Below, one piece after another: positions 15,748 to 56,167 of a stretch of DNA of 64,000 bases (position 1 is its first letter; each line of letters starts with the position of its first letter). Both the position numbers and the translations under genes were made by a program. The stretch is taken from IMG/VR virus record IMGVR_UViG_3300031669_000001, positions 186,001-250,000 of that record; one strand, 5' to 3'. The notes beneath the pieces are model-generated. The model did no database searches and had not been told where the DNA came from. It was given only the letters and a program-made list of their open reading frames with translations.

Positions 15748-15884
15748 TTTGATTTCCTTTGATTTAGTTGTTATCGCAATACAGCGATCTTGATATTTAT
15801 AGCGAGGGGCCGTATTCAGTTTTCAGAAACTAAAATGGCTCTTCTAAGAGAGCCATTCTATCATACTGTGAAGGTTGTTGATAT

Positions 15885-16901
15885 TTACGGGAACACGTAA
15901 AGCTTCTTCGTAAAGTGATCGCCGATCGTTTCGAGAATGATTGTCTCGATGATCTTCCAGTTGCCACCTGCAAGACCAGCGCCAATCATTGGGAAGATGA
16001 TGTCTAGCTTGCGACCATTGCTCTCTTCGACTATTTCAGCAAGCTTTTTCACCTTCTCAAAGCATTTGGCGATAGCTTCATAATCCACGTAGCGTTTATC
16101 ACCGCCACAGCTGTATTGAGTATTGGCATTTACGATGAATTTGAATGGAGAAACTTCGGCAAAAGATATTTCGCCGAGTCTAAGGCCGTCAAAGTCGCCG
16201 TGACCTGATCCACCAGCAGTAGAACTTTGATACTGGTCAATGTAGGCATCGTACGCAGTTGGGAATCTGCGTGCAACTTGTAGAGCGATGCCAGCACCCA
16301 TCACGCCTTGACAATTGCAGCCGTGAACGATGATACCCGTTTGTGGTGATAGGGCATCACCACTGAACTGCAAATAGTTTCTTCCTTGACCTTCTGGTGT
16401 AAATGCGCCTATCATTGCTTTGCTCCAATCAAAATTTACGTTATGATCAACATCTCTCACCAGTTGATCAGGGAGGTTTATCTTCGGCTGCCAATCATAC
16501 TGACGGCCGATTGTGATGTGCATTCTGTAATCTAGACGCAGTCCAAGTTCACGTCGAATCTCAATCAGACGATTAGATTCCACGGTGATAGACCAGAACT
16601 GCCAGTGGCGCTCGATACGAGTCGGATCATACTCGATTTCTACGGTATGACCTTGATACTTCTTCCACAGATCAATCTTGTCTTTGCCAATGCGCTCATC
16701 GCCCTTGACTACGGTGCAGTGAAGACCAAACATAGGACGCTGCAGAGTTAGCCACTGTCCAAACTTCTGGCGAAGGAACCACTGATAGTAGAGATCAAGT
16801 TGATCGCGCGGGAGCTCCACTATGAGAGTACGCTGTTTGTGCAGCTTCTTGAAGTCAGGACGAACAGGGTCATAGACCAACTTACCCTTTACTTTTATCA
16901 T
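15885..16901 (-). CDS. 2H phosphoesterase-like domain fused to a macrodomain
   Basis: Two HxT motifs (HCT, HIT) in the N-half; macro motifs HGCNC.G.MGAGIA, NA.TQ, P.IGAGLAGG.W. Confidence 0.8.
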   Translation of the reverse strand: MIKVKGKLVYDPVRPDFKKLHKQRTLIVELPRDQLDLYYQWFLRQKFGQWLTLQRPMFGLHCTVVKGDERIGKDKIDLWKKYQGHTVEIEYDPTRIERHWQFWSITVESNRLIEIRRELGLRLDYRMHITIGRQYDWQPKINLPDQLVRDVDHNVNFDWSKAMIGAFTPEGQGRNYLQFSGDALSPQTGIIVHGCNCQGVMGAGIALQVARRFPTAYDAYIDQYQSSTAGGSGHGDFDGLRLGEISFAEVSPFKFIVNANTQYSCGGDKRYVDYEAIAKCFEKVKKLAEIVEESNGRKLDIIFPMIGAGLAGGNWKIIETIILETIGDHFTKKLYVFP

Positions 16902-16916
16902 TGATCAACTCCTAAT

Positions 16917-16992
16917 TGGTCGCCCTGGAGGGATTCGAACCCTCGATCGCGATTTTAGAGATCGCAGCTTTACCGCTAAGCATTACAAGGCG
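16917..16992 (-). tRNA. amber suppressor tRNA (anticodon CTA)
   Basis: Acceptor CGCCTTG/CAGGGCG-A-CCA, anticodon arm GCGAT-CTCTAAA-ATCGC, T arm GAGGG-TTCGAAT-CCCTC. Confidence 0.88.
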
Positions 16993-17130
16993 TTTGGTTT
17001 AATTACAAGCTTCTAAATCTTTCCATTGACGACGAACTACTTGTCCTAAAAGAGCTTTACGAACGCGGCGCCGAGCTTTACGACCTGAGGCACCATGACC
17101 TAAATACATACGCTTAGAAACTGCTGACAT

Positions 17131-17334
17131 TTAAGCTCCTATCTCCATGCAATGTGCGTGATATTCTGCATCGCTGTTTTCAGCATCGTAAAGCCATGCG
17201 TGCTCTGCAGCTTGCTCAGCAGCTTGCAGACCCGGATCGCCTTCATCGAACCAATAATTTGCTTCATCTTCAGGAACACCTTTAGCTACCTCAGCCGCAA
17301 CGTAAGCTGCACGACCATCTTCATAATTAGCCAT
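17131..17334 (-). CDS. hypothetical acidic protein
   Basis: 67 aa ORF with SD. Confidence 0.6.
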   Translation of the reverse strand: MANYEDGRAAYVAAEVAKGVPEDEANYWFDEGDPGLQAAEQAAEHAWLYDAENSDAEYHAHCMEIGA

Positions 17335-17474
17335 TTTTCCTCCGAAGTTTTTCAGTGTATCGTTTCTCTTCTGCTTGAACTTTGCGAAGCCTTTTCAATC
17401 CAGGATCTATCGCTCTCATCTTTTTCATGATCTCAGCCTCGGCTTTTTTAGCCTTAACTGGATCATAGACGTGA

Positions 17475-17591
17475 TTAGTCAAAGTTCACGCTCTTGTTGC
17501 GCTTGAAGGATCCTTTTCCCTTCTTGGAGCGTACAATTTGAAGCTTGTACTTTGGTGTGCGGCAATCTTTGTGAACGATGGATGCTTTCAT
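17475..17591 (-). CDS. arfA: ArfA-like ribosome rescue peptide (38 aa; not in ORF track)
   Basis: MKASIVHKDCRTPKYKLQIVRSKKGKGSFKRNKSVNFD carries the KKGKGS(Y/F).R signature; SD and early promoter upstream. Confidence 0.75.
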   Translation of the reverse strand: MKASIVHKDCRTPKYKLQIVRSKKGKGSFKRNKSVNFD

Positions 17592-17616: not shown

Positions 17617-17646
17617 ATTATATCAAAGATTTATATGAAAGTAAAC
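17617..17646 (-). promoter_or_regulatory. T4-like early promoter (representative copy)
   Basis: GTTTACTTT...TGATATAAT; similar copies near 22380, 29490, 33380, 34517, 35483, 38780, 42392, 46893, 48410, 51518, 58134, 60831 (minus) and 49218 (plus). Confidence 0.8.
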
Positions 17647-17939: not shown

Positions 17940-18728
17940 TTATTCTCCTATAGTTGCAGTTTTTTTGAACATGAAAGTAGGGCTTATCGAGATCATGTCA
18001 GGCATGTCGATGAGCTTTACAGGTTTACGAGTTACCTTCTCTGAAGTCCTGTGCTTCTCTGGAATCTTTTCCAGCTCGTCAGTAGTCAGAGGACGAGTTT
18101 CTTCTACTCGCATGAAGTACGATCCTTTGCGGTAACAAGCATCGTATTCTTCCCAAGGATCACCAATATCACGAAGCATAGACTTCTTGATGTCACCATT
18201 GACGTTCTGCAGATCCTTGTGAGAGAAGTGAGACAGAGCTACCATCGTGATAGAATTTTTGATGGCATCCTTTTCTCTCCAGAGCAGGCAGAGATAAGCT
18301 TCGCGAATAGACGGAACTTGCCACACTCTTGCATCGAATATGGGAAGCCATTCCTTCTTAGACGGGAGATATTTTTCAAGATTTCTATTGAAGAACGCCG
18401 TAGCTGTTGCAGCTAGAACTGAACAGAGTTTTTGGTAACGTCCGTCAAACAGGTATTGAGAAGCGCTTGACTCAGGAAGATACCAGATCAGAGTTATCTC
18501 ATCTGATTGAGTGTAGCCTACGAGAGCGTTGGTTTCTTCTGTCAAGAAGCGAGTAGTTTCCTGCATCAGCTTTGTAAGATTCTCGTCGAAAGGTCGCTTC
18601 AGACCGCTTGTGAATGTGTGAAAAGCTCTTCCATCTAGCCGAGCTATCATCGGCATGCCTTTGGAGGCGCGCCGATCTGTTTCAACACCTTCAAGATTCT
18701 TCATGAGATCGCCTAAAGTATCAGCCAT
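17940..18728 (-). CDS. tRNA(His) guanylyltransferase Thg1-like
   Basis: RLDGRAFHTFT, YTQSDEI, FDGR.QK, FDARV, WRE.DA..NS; start set to MADTLG. Confidence 0.93.
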   Translation of the reverse strand: MADTLGDLMKNLEGVETDRRASKGMPMIARLDGRAFHTFTSGLKRPFDENLTKLMQETTRFLTEETNALVGYTQSDEITLIWYLPESSASQYLFDGRYQKLCSVLAATATAFFNRNLEKYLPSKKEWLPIFDARVWQVPSIREAYLCLLWREKDAIKNSITMVALSHFSHKDLQNVNGDIKKSMLRDIGDPWEEYDACYRKGSYFMRVEETRPLTTDELEKIPEKHRTSEKVTRKPVKLIDMPDMISISPTFMFKKTATIGE

Positions 18729-18818
18729 TTTGTAACACCTCGTTAACATTAGATGTTGAATTATAACATACTTTAGCCGACAAATAAATAGAAAGATTAA
18801 CTTTTTAAGGAATTTCTC

Positions 18819-26818: not shown

Positions 26819-26952
26819 GGTACACCTAGGCAGTTTTGAGCTACCGTCTTCCAATTGGGCTTACAAAATTATGCCAATTGAACGCTTTGACATTAAGCTA
26901 TAGGTGATTAGGTTTCCATTATATTACATCACTTTTAGAAAGTACAATTATT

Positions 26953-27630
26953 TTACATCCACATCTGTTCAAGCTTACCCTGACGAACATCTCTCAGACG
27001 CATCTTGACTTCACTGCGGTGATCTGTAACTTGATCGTCACGTTCTCTGTAAGTTCTAACCTTATCTCCACGCATTCCAGAGCCTCGATCTTCCTTACGC
27101 TTCTTGTCGAGAGCTTCATACTTTTGAGCGTCGTAGAATCTCTTCACTCGAGTTTCAAGCATCTCGCGCGCTGTCTTCTTGTTGTTGTACTGGCTTTTTG
27201 TAGAAGCTTTAGCCTCTATCCCAGTTGGAAGGTGACGCATGATCACGCAACTTTCAGTCTTGTTGCGGTGTTGACCACCTGGACCAGTATCTTTCGTTGT
27301 GAACATCAAGATGTCTTTCTCGTTGAGACTCCATTCACTTTCTTCAGGCACAACCATGGCCACTACTGTTACCGTTGAAGTGTGAACTCTACCTTTTCGT
27401 TCTGTTGGAGGGATTCTTTGCCACCGATGACCACCGCTTTCTTGCAGTAGCCTATTGACGAGATTGTCCGGCCCGTCGACCGTTAGATTGATTCAACCGT
27501 GCTCGGTTTCAACCTCAACGCCAGCACGAACGCGCTCGGCGAACTTACAATAGATCGCAGCTTGATCGCTGACGAGCAACTTTGCATCTTCTCCACCTTC
27601 ACCAGGTCGGATTTCCAATAACACTTTCAC
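26953..27630 (-). CDS. RF1-type peptide chain release factor lacking domain 1, with in-frame TGA at codon 46 (27493-27495)
   Basis: SD AAGGAG + GTG start; LEIRPGEGGEDA...EHG*...ESGGHRWQRIPPTERKGRVHTST...GPGGQHRNKTES...RGDKVRTY all in one frame. Confidence 0.88.
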
Positions 27631-35513: not shown

Positions 35514-36128
35514 TTATTCGCCGTCTTCCGGGAGACCTTGGCTAAACAGTCTATCGTAGTACTCTTTCGTCTTGATCTTAACCATAAAGTCATCACCTTT
35601 AGCGATGACACCTTCGAAGACTGGGTACTTGCCTTCGCGAACGTCATTGATGAATGACTTATTGAGGTTGCCCTCGTATATCACTTCAGCAGTTTCCGGC
35701 ATTGAGCCGTAGATGTCAACGAATTGTTTAGGAGGAACGAATCCCTTCTTAAACAGAAAAACGTCAAACAGCTTCAACTCCTTCGCTTCACCCTCGACGT
35801 GCTTTCCGGCAAAGCTTGACGGACCAAAAAGCTCGGTAAACGCTGTGATGCGCTCGGGCTTCTTGACTATCTGAGTCGTGCGGTAAACTATTTCATCTGC
35901 TAACTTTTCCATGAATATCGGAATTGCTTCGCAGAAGATTGGAGCGGAAGCGTCAAACATTTGGCGCCTGGTGCCGAATTTGTTCCAACCTTTCTTAGGA
36001 GACCACTCCCAGCGAAGGTTAGAACCGTCATACTTGTAGAAAGCGATGCATGATTTACCTAATGGAGCTTTTGAAGCACCTAAAATAGTTGGATATTGTA
36101 ACATTTTGATGCCTTTCATGTGGGTCAT
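35514..36128 (-). CDS. ATP-dependent RNA ligase-like nucleotidyltransferase
   Basis: KYDGSN (motif I), ELFG, LFDV, EGVIAK, KIK. Confidence 0.8.
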   Translation of the reverse strand: MTHMKGIKMLQYPTILGASKAPLGKSCIAFYKYDGSNLRWEWSPKKGWNKFGTRRQMFDASAPIFCEAIPIFMEKLADEIVYRTTQIVKKPERITAFTELFGPSSFAGKHVEGEAKELKLFDVFLFKKGFVPPKQFVDIYGSMPETAEVIYEGNLNKSFINDVREGKYPVFEGVIAKGDDFMVKIKTKEYYDRLFSQGLPEDGE

Positions 36129-36135
36129 GAAAGCA

Positions 36136-36369
36136 TTACAATGGATTCTTTATGACGAAATCGAGGAAATCGCCTCTTTCAAGAGATGCCATGAAATCGA
36201 GATAAGCCTGAGACTACTTAACATCGTTCAAACTGTCTTCAGTCTCGAACAAGTGCAGCGCTGAAATCTCTAGGACTCTTTTCTTCACGTCAGCCATCGC
36301 TTTTGCTTCCAGAGAGTGATTAACTTCTGTGCTTGCGACTTGCTTTAATTGCGAGTTAATGACTTCCAT
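36136..36369 (-). CDS. small protein of 51 aa; in-frame TAG (36214-36216) then a 25-aa open extension
   Basis: SD AGGAG; MEVINSQ...NDVK*SQAYLDFMASLERGDFLDFVIKNPL. Confidence 0.55.
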
Positions 36370-38881: not shown

Positions 38882-38981
38882 TGGTAGTCCCGCTCGGACT
38901 CGAACCGAGAATGTGCGCTAATCTGGCGCCACAGAGTGCCACTTTATAAGGGTGGTGTTTTACCAATTAAACTACAGGACC
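38882..38981 (-). tRNA. tRNA-Ile(TAT) with long variable arm
   Basis: GGTCCTG/CGGGACT, loop CTTATAA, CCA. Confidence 0.8.
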
Positions 38982-41630: not shown

Positions 41631-41704
41631 TGGTAGTCCCGGTCGGAATCGAACCGACGTGTTTCGCTAATCGGGCGAACACCTTACCATTAGATGACAG
41701 GACT
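41631..41704 (-). tRNA. tRNA-Ile(GAT), C33/U37
   Basis: Loop CCGATTA, CCA. Confidence 0.75.
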
Positions 41705-41716
41705 ACAACGATTGAA

Positions 41717-41787
41717 CGACATACGGGGAATCGAACCCGCGATCTCCGGCGTGAAGGCCAGGGTTTTGTCCGTTAAACTACACATCT
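41717..41787 (-). tRNA. Glu-like tRNA with a 6-nt anticodon loop (CTTCAC), no CCA
   Basis: D and T arms intact; stem CTGGC/GCCGG. Confidence 0.5.
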
Positions 41788-41870
41788 CAGATCTTTTTTC
41801 AAAACTTGCTGGAATCGATTAAAATCTGTCAATCGTGATCATATCCACGGCAGCAACCGCTTCAATAATT

Positions 41871-45131: not shown

Positions 45132-45206
45132 TGGTACACCTGCAGGGAATCGAACCCTGTATTCCAGCTTGAAGGGCTGGCCACTCAACCAATTGTATTC
45201 AGGTGT
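45132..45206 (-). tRNA. tRNA-Glu(TTC), C33
   Basis: Loop CCTTCAA, CCA. Confidence 0.8.
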
Positions 45207-55579: not shown

Positions 55580-56167
55580 TTAAGTTTTTCTACTTGTATT
55601 CGCATTCATAATCCATTGATAGTTGAAGTCAAAGTCATCTTGATCTCCGACTGTAGCCATCTCTCCACTAGGAAGAAACTTCCCGATAACGAGAACATCA
55701 CCAGCATCTACCTTGTTCAAGAGACGGTACAGTCTCTTGTTTGCGCCAGACGCATTAGCGTAATCACCTTCAACCTGACCATAAAGGTCGGCATTATACT
55801 TTTCAGAGATGAATTTTGCAACAGCTGCAGAACGACTTACCCCTGCATGACAATGAACTATAACCCGCTCACACGTTATCCTATTCAAAAAATCTATGAT
55901 TGCTTTTGCATGATTTGCATCAGGCAGGCGTAGGTTGTGCCACAGAACTGGACCATCAGGGTCAGCGTCAGGGACGGCACCCAAAGGTTCATGAATAGTT
56001 TCTTCTTCCAGATCATCAAAGCTCAGCCTTAGGATCGAGAAAAAGCCATCATTTATCAAGGCTTTAGGATCTCCAGGGGAAGTAATTGAGATTATAGCGG
56101 TGTCAGAGCGTACAACTTCTCGATGTTCCATCCAACGCTGACTAACGAATTTAACGGTTTTGATCAT
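55580..56167 (-). CDS. protein tyrosine/dual-specificity phosphatase family
   Basis: VHCHAGVSRS (CX5R), F.D. Confidence 0.88.
   Translation of the reverse strand: MIKTVKFVSQRWMEHREVVRSDTAIISITSPGDPKALINDGFFSILRLSFDDLEEETIHEPLGAVPDADPDGPVLWHNLRLPDANHAKAIIDFLNRITCERVIVHCHAGVSRSAAVAKFISEKYNADLYGQVEGDYANASGANKRLYRLLNKVDAGDVLVIGKFLPSGEMATVGDQDDFDFNYQWIMNANTSRKT

What the first reader, a model, noticed from the sequence alone, without database searches (positions are those of the whole stretch)
16917..16992. Stand-alone amber suppressor tRNA in a standard-code phage
Seen: a full cloverleaf with a perfect anticodon stem, loop CT-CTA-AA and encoded CCA. It has C1:G72, A73, a short variable loop and an unusual 4-nt acceptor-to-D linker. 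It lies 18 kb from the tRNA arrays, downstream of the early promoter that drives the ArfA-like gene. Established: C1:G72/A73 are identity elements of bacterial tRNA-Pro and of archaeal/eukaryotic tRNA-Tyr. The charged amino acid cannot be deduced from sequence alone.
Basis: partly seen in the sequence, partly recalled or inferred. Interest (0 to 1): 0.75.

Follow-up and report, generated by a model that had tools for sequence, protein, structure and literature searches.

The report
Conserved phage nonsense-suppressor tRNA gene
A soil jumbo phage that uses the ordinary genetic code carries a real tRNA gene that reads the UAG stop codon; related phages keep a stop-reading tRNA at the same spot, just upstream of an RNA-repair-type gene, but what it is for is still unknown.

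Summary
Window 16917-16992 (minus strand) is a tRNA gene with anticodon CUA (ARAGORN; Rfam 44 bits). It has a 7-bp acceptor stem with C1:G72, A73, an encoded CCA, a 4-nt variable loop and two extra bases (AU) in the acceptor-to-D connector.

The 345-kb genome uses the standard code, and TAG ends about 12-14% of its ORFs. None of the six aminoacyl-tRNA synthetase families searched is present.

The kind is already known: CUA tRNAs are annotated in the standard-code jumbo phages XacN1, RsoM2USA, CBB and RAS14, with no known target.

What I add is synteny. In 13 of 15 related metagenomic lineages a stop-reading tRNA (CUA in 10, UUA in 3) lies 10-19 nt upstream of the same 2H-phosphoesterase gene, usually followed by a Macro gene. 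ArfA-like, Thg1, CCA-adding enzyme and ClpP genes are often nearby. Sixteen of the stem pairs show compensatory changes, while U35 and A36-A38 never change. That points to selection for stop-codon decoding.

C1:G72 and the AU insertion are not conserved, so the Pro/Tyr lead fails. The inserted amino acid is unknown (Lys or Gln are guesses). No dedicated read-through target was found. Verdict: new member of a known kind; the conserved context was not described in the papers I searched.

The parts
16917..16992 (-). tRNA gene with anticodon CUA (amber-reading), 76 nt, CCA encoded
   Evidence: ARAGORN; Rfam RF00005 at 44 bits; cloverleaf read from the sequence; 12 syntenic orthologues with compensatory stem changes
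16956..16958 (-). Anticodon CUA (tRNA positions 34-36). The surrounding loop is CU-CUA-AA, and A36-A37-A38 is invariant in the orthologues
   Evidence: Sequence; alignment A5
16982..16985 (-). 4-nt acceptor-to-D connector UAAU. The two extra bases (AU, 16982-16983) are found only in this phage's copy
   Evidence: Rfam alignment shows the insertion; all 12 orthologues have the usual UA; no indel variants at depth 193
17617..17645 (-). Sigma70-like promoter match with an extended -10, one of at least 22 near-identical sites in the genome. It is the presumed start of the operon
   Evidence: No terminator-like site was found on the minus strand between it and the tRNA
17475..17591 (-). ArfA-like 38-aa ORF with the KGKGSF motif, first gene of the operon
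   Evidence: Pfam ArfA E 9.4e-5, 22.2 bits, below the 25.5 cut-off; homologues in L044, L047, L059 and RsoM2USA
16999..17482 (-). Three small ORFs (51, 67 and 43 aa) between the ArfA-like gene and the tRNA. The 43-aa basic ORF ends 6 nt before the tRNA
   Evidence: The 43-aa ORF is 97% identical to its L038 counterpart despite synonymous differences
15885..16901 (-). Fused 2H-phosphoesterase + Macro domain gene. Its start codon lies 15 nt after the tRNA 3' end, with AGGAG in between
   Evidence: Pfam Macro 33 bits and 2H-SAK 17.8 bits, the latter below cut-off; two conserved HxT motifs; weak fold matches to LigT, Acb1 and the Appr>p CPDase
15831..15860 (-). Hairpin followed by a U-rich tract after the 2H-Macro stop codon; the likely end of the operon
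   Evidence: ViennaRNA fold. Similar hairpins follow the Macro gene in L038, L043 and L044. The consensus terminator scan did not call it
17940..18731 (-). Thg1-like tRNA 5'-end nucleotidyltransferase gene, immediately upstream of the operon
   Evidence: Pfam Thg1 103.7 bits; it directly precedes the suppressor tRNA in L058, L060 and L063

Best explanation
This is a functional nonsense-suppressor tRNA gene, one copy of a conserved phage gene pair: a stop-reading tRNA followed by a 2H phosphoesterase gene.

Proposed mechanism, with the status of each step:
1. Host RNA polymerase transcribes it from a sigma70-like promoter as part of a polycistronic RNA: ArfA-like gene, three small ORFs, tRNA, 2H-Macro (inferred).
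2. Host RNase P and 3' trimming release a tRNA that already carries CCA (inferred; the CCA is shown).
3. A host synthetase charges it, because the phage encodes none of the six families searched (inferred). The enzymes most likely to accept it are the ones that read U35. LysRS is the first guess, since A73 is kept in 11 of 13 orthologues. GlnRS is second.
4. The charged tRNA competes with release factor 1 at UAG codons and gives low-level, genome-wide read-through rather than decoding a recoded gene (inferred).
5. Read-through ribosomes that reach mRNA 3' ends are handled by the phage's own rescue kit: the ArfA-like protein in the same operon, a tmRNA and a GGQ-domain protein elsewhere in the genome (inferred).

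Shown here: the gene, its structure, its conservation, the standard code, and the absence of a recoded target. The benefit to the phage is not established.
For: - Real tRNA.
- Conserved position. A CUA (10) or UUA (3) tRNA lies 10-19 nt upstream of the orthologous 2H gene in 13 of 15 lineages. Their 2H proteins are 46-77% identical to the window's, where this was measured.
- Selection for tRNA structure and for stop decoding. All stem cells pair. Sixteen pairs carry compensatory changes. The covariation score is 0.76, against 0.25 for shuffles and at most 0.14 for slid registers. U35, A36, A37 and A38 are invariant, and position 34 is C or U only. By established knowledge, A36-A37-A38 is the determinant for MiaA modification of tRNAs that read U-initial codons, and that modification supports suppression.
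- Each related locus holds exactly this one tRNA.
- Operon placement: the promoter family; in L043 a TGATATAAT box sits about 20 nt before the tRNA; gene spacing is tight and all neighbouring genes end in TAA.
- An identical 183-nt contig covering 16861-17043 is present in a soil metatranscriptome.
- No phage synthetase of families PF00587, PF00749, PF00152, PF00579 or PF01409.
- No recoding, and no long open extensions after TAG: the maximum is 78 codons and the median 9, the same as for TAA and TGA.
- Rescue factors: ArfA-like, permuted tmRNA, GGQ protein.
- Published link: read-through by nonsense suppressor tRNAs creates non-stop stalls that tmRNA handles (Ueda 2002, cited in PMC3985003).
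- A C1:G72/A73/CUA tRNA is weakly lysylated in E. coli (PMC1483225).
Against: - There is no experimental evidence of charging or suppression.
- The RNA-library contig could be carried-over DNA. Contigs from both strands and from neighbouring genes appear at similar low depth.
- The window's copy is the most atypical of the family. It scores 44 bits against 58-71 for the orthologues, because of the AU insertion in the connector, so it could be impaired.
- The genome shows no adaptation to an active suppressor. TAG is not especially avoided (42 of 356 ORFs of at least 100 aa), and back-up stops after TAG are no more frequent than after the other stops.
- Three orthologues read UAA, the commonest stop codon. 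That is hard to reconcile with anything but weak suppression or a role not yet understood.
- Acceptor-end identity elements vary (1:72; A73 versus G73), so no single synthetase assignment is supported.
- The ArfA-like gene is absent from XacN1, CBB and RAS14, which also carry CUA tRNAs.
Confidence: 0.55

Rival explanations
1. Programmed read-through of one particular gene. The tRNA exists to extend or fuse a specific phage protein, and the best candidates are the genes directly downstream. Read-through of a TAG between the 2H and Macro genes would make the fused 2H-Macro protein that the window encodes as a single ORF.
For: - In L038 the 2H ORF ends in TAG, in frame with the Macro ORF three codons later. 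The window has one fused ORF at the same place.
- In L049 the 2H gene ends in TAG, in frame with the next ORF.
- The Macro gene is the only TAG-terminated gene in both L043 and L044.
Against: - With the larger sample, TAG ends 4 of 15 2H genes and 2 of 12 Macro genes. That is not clearly above the 12-14% background.
- L048, which lacks the tRNA, also has a 2H gene ending in TAG and in frame with the next ORF. In L060 a TGA-ending 2H gene is likewise in frame with its neighbour.
- The TAG in L038 overlaps a normal AGGAG ribosome-binding site for the Macro start.
- In the window, the downstream gene and all operon neighbours end in TAA.
- Genome-wide, no open extension after TAG exceeds 78 codons.
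- XacN1's authors found no target among 18 amber stops.
Confidence: 0.12
2. The tRNA marks a phage on the way to, or back from, TAG reassignment (code 15). In the published model, a suppressor tRNA is acquired before in-frame stop codons appear.
For: The Borges et al. preprint proposes loss of stop codons, then acquisition of a suppressor, then recoding of late genes. TAG is the rarest stop codon here.
Against: - There are no in-frame TAGs in conserved genes, and coding density is high under code 11.
- TAG still ends roughly 40-80 ORFs and marks true C-termini.
- GC content is 42.8%, not the low GC of the lineages in that model.
- The tRNA is conserved across deep divergence in phages whose loci also use TAG as a stop. 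Three lineages switched to UUA, which does not fit TAG-specific recoding.
- No full-length release factor 2 gene was found, only a 136-aa GGQ domain protein.
Confidence: 0.07
3. The RNA acts without decoding. It could be a processing signal: RNase P cleavage at the tRNA would give the 2H mRNA a defined, short 5' end. It could also be a substrate or decoy for tRNA-targeting host nucleases that the neighbouring repair enzymes then deal with.
For: - The distance from the tRNA 3' end to the 2H start is a constant 10-19 nt in 13 lineages.
- The neighbourhood is rich in tRNA-end maintenance genes: Thg1, CCA-adding enzyme, 2H and Macro.
- Jumbo-phage RNA-repair systems of this kind are described in PMC7824862.
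Against: - A pure processing signal would not need an invariant U35-A36-A37-A38 with only C or U at position 34. That pattern is exactly the set of anticodons that read UAG and UAA, and it is kept while every stem drifts.
- The acceptor end, the CCA, the T loop and the D loop stay those of a chargeable elongator tRNA.
Confidence: 0.12
4. In this particular phage the gene is decaying. The two-base insertion in the connector disables a tRNA that is functional in relatives.
For: The AU insertion is unique among the 13 orthologues, and the Rfam score is the lowest of the family (44 against 58-71 bits).
Against: - All four stems are perfect, apart from one G-U pair.
- U8, A14, G18G19, the T loop, the anticodon loop and the CCA are intact.
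- The population shows no variants at depth 193.
- The score still exceeds that of several other tRNAs in this genome.
Confidence: 0.12

Closest known systems
CUA 'suppressor' tRNAs annotated in standard-code jumbo phages: Xanthomonas phage XacN1, Ralstonia phage RsoM2USA, Pectobacterium phage CBB, Stenotrophomonas phage RAS14
   Same: - They are type-I tRNAs with anticodon CUA in very large tRNA-rich myovirus genomes that use TAG as a stop, and no target gene has been identified (PMC5852040 and PMC8504454; annotations).
- CBB's copy is 81% identical to the window's over 67 nt.
- By DNA polymerase, RsoM2USA is the window's nearest cultured relative, at 43% amino-acid identity.
   Different: - In those phages the tRNA is not next to a 2H gene. 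In RsoM2USA the 2H, Macro and suppressor genes lie at 43, 332 and 56 kb. XacN1 has none nearby.
- XacN1 carries two tandem copies that differ in acceptor stem and discriminator base.
- None of them has the AU insertion.
Suppressor tRNAs of alternative-code phages (code 15 crAss-like, Lak and related gut phages)
   Same: They are phage-encoded CUA tRNAs, presumably charged by host synthetases, and are often expressed before late genes (preprint 10.1101/2021.08.26.457843).
   Different: [quoted passage not shown] None of these applies here.
Classical E. coli nonsense suppressors (supE and supB from tRNA-Gln; the lysine ochre suppressors supG and supL; su7 from tRNA-Trp)
   Same: The loop CU-CUA-AA is one base away from the tRNA-Lys(CUU) loop (U36A) and from the tRNA-Trp(CCA) loop (C35U). 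The CUA/UUA alternation among orthologues mirrors amber/ochre pairs derived from Gln or Lys tRNAs. This rests on my own knowledge; the phage tRNA sequences are.
   Different: No sense tRNA in this genome or in RsoM2USA is a close parent. The suppressor tRNAs are each other's nearest neighbours, so this is an old family under selection, not a recent mutant.
tRNA-Pyl (the label ARAGORN prints)
   Same: Only the CUA anticodon.
   Different: The window tRNA has a 5-bp anticodon stem, G18G19, a canonical T loop, a 4-nt variable loop and a long connector rather than a 1-nt one. No PylRS-type catalytic domain is present in the genome.

Membership tests
Canonical elongator tRNA (Rfam RF00005) | Score above the curated threshold, with a cloverleaf that has a 7-bp acceptor stem, a 4-bp D stem, a 5-bp anticodon stem with a 7-nt loop, and a 5-bp T stem with a GTTCRAnnC loop | tested here: met
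   44 bits against a gathering score of 29; stems read directly from the sequence
Canonical elongator tRNA (Rfam RF00005) | Two-nucleotide connector (positions 8-9) between the acceptor and D stems | tested here: not met
   The connector is UAAU, 4 nt, or 3 nt plus a U.U pair in ARAGORN's drawing. All 12 orthologues have 2 nt
Nonsense (amber) suppressor tRNA | Anticodon complementary to UAG in an otherwise normal anticodon loop (U33, purine 37) | tested here: met
   Loop C32 U33 C34 U35 A36 A37 A38. CUA or UUA is kept in 13 syntenic lineages
Nonsense (amber) suppressor tRNA | The tRNA is aminoacylated and inserts an amino acid at UAG in vivo | not testable with these tools
   The only expression hint is an identical 183-nt contig in an RNA library, and DNA carry-over cannot be excluded
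Alternative-code (TAG-recoded) phage system | In-frame TAG codons in conserved genes, and low coding density under the standard code | tested here: not met
   Coding coverage is 82.5% to 91.8% under code 11. Reading TAG as sense adds no real coding sequence. The DNA polymerase and other large genes are intact
Bacterial tRNA-Pro | C1:G72 and A73 together with G35 and G36 in the anticodon | tested here: not met
   C1:G72 and A73 are present, but the anticodon is CUA. Five non-Pro tRNAs in this genome share C1:G72/A73. Most orthologues have G1:C72. ProRS did not charge a comparable tRNA (PMC1483225)
Archaeal/eukaryotic-type tRNA-Tyr with its own synthetase (an orthogonal pair) | C1:G72 and A73 conserved, plus a cognate TyrRS gene | tested here: not met
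   No PF00579 (TyrRS/TrpRS) match in the complete genome, while the control rang in 14 of 14 genomes. C1:G72 is not conserved among orthologues
tRNA-Pyl | 6-bp anticodon stem, 3-nt variable loop, 1-nt connector, a small D loop without G18G19, and PylRS present | tested here: not met
   Structure read from the sequence; no PF01409-type domain in the genome
Suppressor-tRNA / 2H-phosphoesterase gene pair (defined in this report) | A stop-reading tRNA 10-19 nt upstream of an orthologous 2H gene with two HxT motifs | tested here: met
   The gap in the window is 15 nt. 13 of 15 lineages have the pair

The most novel reading that the evidence does not exclude
The stop-reading tRNA may be a dedicated, selected component of a phage translation-maintenance module: ArfA-like rescue factor, Thg1, CCA-adding enzyme, 2H and Macro RNA/ADP-ribose end-processing enzymes, ClpP, and a tmRNA elsewhere in the genome. 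Its job would then not be to insert a particular amino acid. Instead it would keep ribosomes from idling at stop codons, or deliberately drive read-through. That could serve to blunt host A-site-directed abortive-infection toxins, or to channel host proteins into tmRNA/ClpP degradation. The free switching between CUA and UUA and the unconserved acceptor identity would fit a role in which the identity of the inserted residue does not matter.
Probability: 0.15. Interest if true: 0.8.

Novelty: new member of a known kind. Interest (0 to 1): 0.5.

Why it matters
Suppressor tRNAs in phages that do not recode stop codons have been noted repeatedly (XacN1 in 2018, RsoM2USA in 2021) and left unexplained. 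This locus does not solve the problem, but it makes it easier to attack.

- The tRNA is not a stray. It is the upstream half of a gene pair kept across at least 13 diverged jumbo-phage lineages.
- Its stop-reading anticodon is under selection, while the amino-acid identity elements at the acceptor end are not conserved.
- It sits in an operon with ribosome-rescue and tRNA-repair functions.

This gives concrete, testable genetics: delete the tRNA, change its anticodon, or uncouple it from the 2H gene, in a cultivable relative. If the link to ribosome rescue or anti-defence is real, it would be a new use of nonsense suppression by viruses. The family may also be of practical interest as natural amber and ochre suppressors with varied acceptor stems.

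Tried and rejected
- **Near-identical DNA in the phage collection.** No match.
- **Exact-pattern scan of IMG/VR for the D arm, CUA loop and T arm.** No match.
- **A parent sense tRNA in the genome.** No sense tRNA was closer than 68-72% crude identity, and no isotype stood out. Origin from Lys, Trp or Gln remains a guess.
- **Phage synthetases.** Six Pfam families were searched and all were negative. The Ile/Leu/Val/Met, Arg, Cys, Ala and Gly families were not searched.
- **KptA/Tpt1, as a partner for 2H and Macro.** Absent.
- **Long read-through products after TAG.** None found.
- **Back-up stops or avoidance of TAG.** No signal.
- **Enrichment of TAG stops on the downstream 2H and Macro genes.** It looked suggestive with 5 loci (4 of 9), but dissolved with 15 loci (6 of 27) and a counter-example that lacks the tRNA.
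- **Link between ArfA and suppressor tRNAs across jumbo phages.** Not general.
- **2H domain against PDB sequences.** No hit. The structure model is mediocre (pLDDT 70), and its fold matches to 2H enzymes are weak, with E about 0.1.
- **Expression.** Only assembled contigs of one small metatranscriptome were available, so the evidence is not decisive.
- **Complex prediction with host synthetases.** Not run. It gives no verdict for RNA partners and could not discriminate between synthetases.

Full report

Yes. ARAGORN finds a 76-nt tRNA on the minus strand at 16917-16992 with anticodon CUA. It prints 'tRNA-Pyl', which is simply its label for that anticodon. Rfam's tRNA model scores it at 44.0 bits against a gathering score of 29, with E 4.5e-6 for the whole window.

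Read from the sequence, the tRNA has:
- a 7-bp acceptor stem, C1:G72 to G7:C66, with one U-G pair;
- a D arm GCUU/AGCGGUA/AAGC, with A14 and G18G19;
- a perfect 5-bp anticodon stem and the loop CU-CUA-AA;
- a 4-nt variable loop, GAUC;
- a T arm GAGGG/UUCGAAU/CCCUC;
- A73 and an encoded CCA.

The one abnormality is the connector between the acceptor and D stems. It is UAAU instead of two bases, and the Rfam alignment shows 'au' as an insertion. The source metagenome covers the region at depth 193 without indel variants, so the insertion is real.

**2. The genome and its genetic code**

The window is bases 186001-250000 of a single 345,069-bp contig with direct terminal repeats, rated complete. 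It comes from a soil metagenome, contig Ga0307375_10000004. GC content is 42.8%. The genome carries 52 ARAGORN tRNAs and a permuted tmRNA.

By DNA polymerase the nearest cultured relatives are Ralstonia phage RsoM2USA (43% amino-acid identity), the Xanthomonas phages XacN1 and Xoo-sp13, and the Stenotrophomonas phages CM1 and RAS14.

The standard code fits:
- ORFs of at least 100 aa cover 82.5% of the genome, and a greedy gene set covers 91.8%.
- Reading TAG as sense adds the least of the three stop codons and fills no gaps.
- TAG ends 79 of 562 crude ORFs, and 42 of 356 ORFs of at least 100 aa.
- The TAG-terminated glycosyltransferase and AAA_28 genes next to the locus end within a few residues of where their homologues end in TAA or TGA.
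- Open frames after TAG are short (median 9 codons, maximum 78), no different from those after TAA or TGA. Back-up stops are not enriched.

**3. Local anatomy**

All of the following lie on the minus strand.
- A sigma70-like promoter match with an extended -10 sits at 17645-17617. It belongs to a family of at least 22 near-identical sites, GTGTACTTT-N-TGTGATATAATTACTCCATC.
- It is followed by a 38-aa ArfA-like ORF with the KGKGSF motif. Pfam ArfA gives E 9.4e-5, just under the cut-off.
- Three small ORFs follow.
- The tRNA starts 6 nt after the last of these ORFs.
- Fifteen nt after the tRNA, behind an AGGAG, begins a 338-aa ORF. It fuses a 2H-phosphoesterase-like domain with two HxT motifs to a Macro domain.
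- A strong hairpin with a U-rich tail follows its stop codon.
- The scan found no terminator-like site between the promoter and the tRNA.
- Every gene in this stretch ends in TAA, or TGA in one case.

Upstream lie a Thg1-like gene and, about 4 kb further, a CCA-adding enzyme. Downstream lies a ClpP homologue. Elsewhere in the window there is a 136-aa GGQ/RF-1-domain protein.

**4. Relatives: the main new result**

Searching with the 2H-Macro protein, and then with a stand-alone 2H homologue, found related metagenomic contigs. I fetched their contexts.

In 13 of 15 distinct lineages a tRNA lies 10-19 nt upstream of the 2H start codon, and in every case its anticodon reads a stop codon:
- CUA: the window, L038, L043, L044 (the same as L045 and L046), L057, L058, L059, L061, L062 and L063.
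- UUA: L047, L049 and L060.
- No tRNA: L048 and L064.

It is the only tRNA in each locus. Where I measured them, the 2H proteins are 46-77% identical to the window's, so these lineages are well diverged.

On the 13 tRNAs:
- Every stem cell forms a standard pair.
- Sixteen pairs carry compensatory changes.
- The covariation score is 0.76, against 0.25 for shuffled partners and at most 0.14 for slid registers.
- U35, A36, A37 and A38 are invariant, and position 34 is only C or U.

This is the pattern expected of a tRNA selected both to fold and to read UAG or UAA. By established knowledge, A36-A37-A38 is the recognition element for MiaA, whose modification of A37 supports decoding of U-initial codons.

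Context genes recur as well:
- ArfA-like in L044/L045, L047 and L059;
- Thg1 directly before the tRNA in L058, L060 and L063, and nearby in L043 and L047;
- the CCA-adding enzyme in L045/L046 and L047;
- ClpP in L043 and L044.

In L043 a TGATATAAT box lies about 20 nt before the tRNA.

**5. What is not conserved**

- C1:G72 is found only in the window, L049 and L059. Most orthologues have G1:C72, and L047 has A1:U72.
- The discriminator is A73 in 11 lineages. It is G73 in two of the three UUA lineages.
- The AU insertion is unique to the window, whose Rfam score (44 bits) is the lowest in the family (58-71 bits).
- Within this genome, C1:G72 with A73 also occurs in Phe, Ile, Arg and Leu tRNAs, as well as in all three Pro tRNAs.

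Published biochemistry points the same way. A C1:G72/A73/CUA tRNA (the yeast tRNA-Tyr suppressor) is not charged by E. coli ProRS or GluRS, is weakly charged by LysRS, and shifts toward GlnRS when pair 31:39 is changed (PMC1483225).

The genome has no match to the synthetase families for Pro/Thr/Ser/Gly/His, Glu/Gln, Lys/Asp/Asn, Tyr/Trp or Phe/Pyl. A host enzyme must therefore do the charging. Lys (from U35 plus A73) or Gln is the most reasonable guess, no more than that.

**6. Comparison with what is known**

CUA tRNAs in standard-code jumbo phages are already in the literature.
- XacN1 has two. Its authors read through all 18 amber stops in silico and found no target (PMC5852040).
- RsoM2USA has one (PMC8504454). 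I located it at 55744-55821.
- CBB and RAS14 are annotated with one each, and RAS14 also has a UUA tRNA.

These tRNAs and the window's family are each other's nearest neighbours, rather than being close to any sense tRNA. In those cultured phages, however, the tRNA is not adjacent to a 2H gene, and the ArfA-like gene is found only in RsoM2USA and the window's genome.

The review of jumbo-phage RNA repair systems describes the Thg1, CCA-adding, 2H and Macro functions, but does not mention suppressor tRNAs or ArfA (PMC7824862). I found no paper describing the tRNA-2H pairing. That is a limited search, not proof of novelty.

**7. How it most likely works**

The commitment and its rivals are set out in the structured fields. 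In short, this is a host-charged, early-transcribed, low-efficiency general suppressor.

A mechanistic reason for its company is documented. Read-through caused by nonsense suppressor tRNAs sends ribosomes to mRNA 3' ends and creates non-stop complexes, which tmRNA resolves (Ueda 2002, cited in PMC3985003). The phage supplies an ArfA-like factor in the same operon, a tmRNA, and a GGQ protein.

Why read-through itself would benefit the phage is not shown. A dedicated cis target (a TAG between or after the 2H and Macro genes) looked attractive in L038, L043, L044 and L049, but it did not survive the larger sample.

**8. Expression**

One small soil metatranscriptome contains an identical 183-nt contig spanning 16861-17043, along with four other identical pieces of the neighbourhood. 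This is compatible with transcription of a precursor. It cannot be told apart from DNA carried into the library.

**9. Verdict**

The gene is a new member of a known and still unexplained kind. The added value is the conserved gene pair and the evidence of selection on the anticodon. Interest is moderate: the kind is published, but the function remains an open question that this module makes testable.

Noticed in passing
window 26821-27363 (minus strand): A 136-aa protein made only of a release-factor GGQ (RF-1) domain (Pfam 76.6 bits). Immediately downstream is a tRNA-like element that only Rfam detects (39.6 bits), with an 18-nt insert in the anticodon loop.
   Followed up: partly
whole genome; e.g. 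window 17617-17645, 29517, 33404, 34543 (minus strand): At least 22 copies of a nearly identical sigma70-like promoter with an extended -10 and a conserved leader (GTGTACTTT-N-TGTGATATAATTACTCCATC). They probably define one temporal class of transcripts.
   Followed up: partly
Xanthomonas phage XacN1 (AP018399.1) 36047-36122 and 36130-36205: Two tandem CUA tRNAs share identical D, anticodon and T arms but have different acceptor stems and discriminators (A73 versus G73). They look as if built for two different synthetases.
   Followed up: no
window 16999-17130 (minus strand); L038 1-102: The 43-aa basic ORF just upstream of the tRNA is 97% identical in protein to its counterpart in L038, despite many synonymous differences. 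The adjacent 2H-Macro protein is only 65% identical. This is a strongly constrained small peptide of unknown function, absent from the more distant relatives.
   Followed up: no
window 15885-16901; L038 200-1210; L039; L043; L044: The 2H and Macro domains form one ORF in the window. In L038 they are split by an in-frame TAG that overlaps an AGGAG site. In other relatives they are separate genes, sometimes with an extra ORF between them.
   Followed up: yes
window 41716-41789, 38885-38981, 41634-41704, 45135-45206 (minus strand): Odd tRNAs in the main arrays: one that ARAGORN reads with a 2-nt anticodon, and three that only Rfam finds. One of the three is 97 nt long, with a UAU-type loop and a long insert.
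   Followed up: no
genome 306555-306937 (outside the window); RsoM2USA 331545-331953: Both phages encode a permuted (two-piece type) tmRNA. The tag peptide in this genome is ANDANGALALAA.
   Followed up: no
window 17300-17588: A salt-marsh metatranscriptome contig carries an ArfA-like gene about 96% identical over 114 nt. It is joined to the downstream sequence differently, skipping the 51-aa ORF, so a relative lives in a different habitat.
   Followed up: no
L059 387-461; L043 4456-4932: The suppressor tRNA closest to the window's (L059) has C33 in place of the near-universal U33. In L043 an HNH endonuclease gene is inserted between the Thg1 gene and the tRNA.
   Followed up: no
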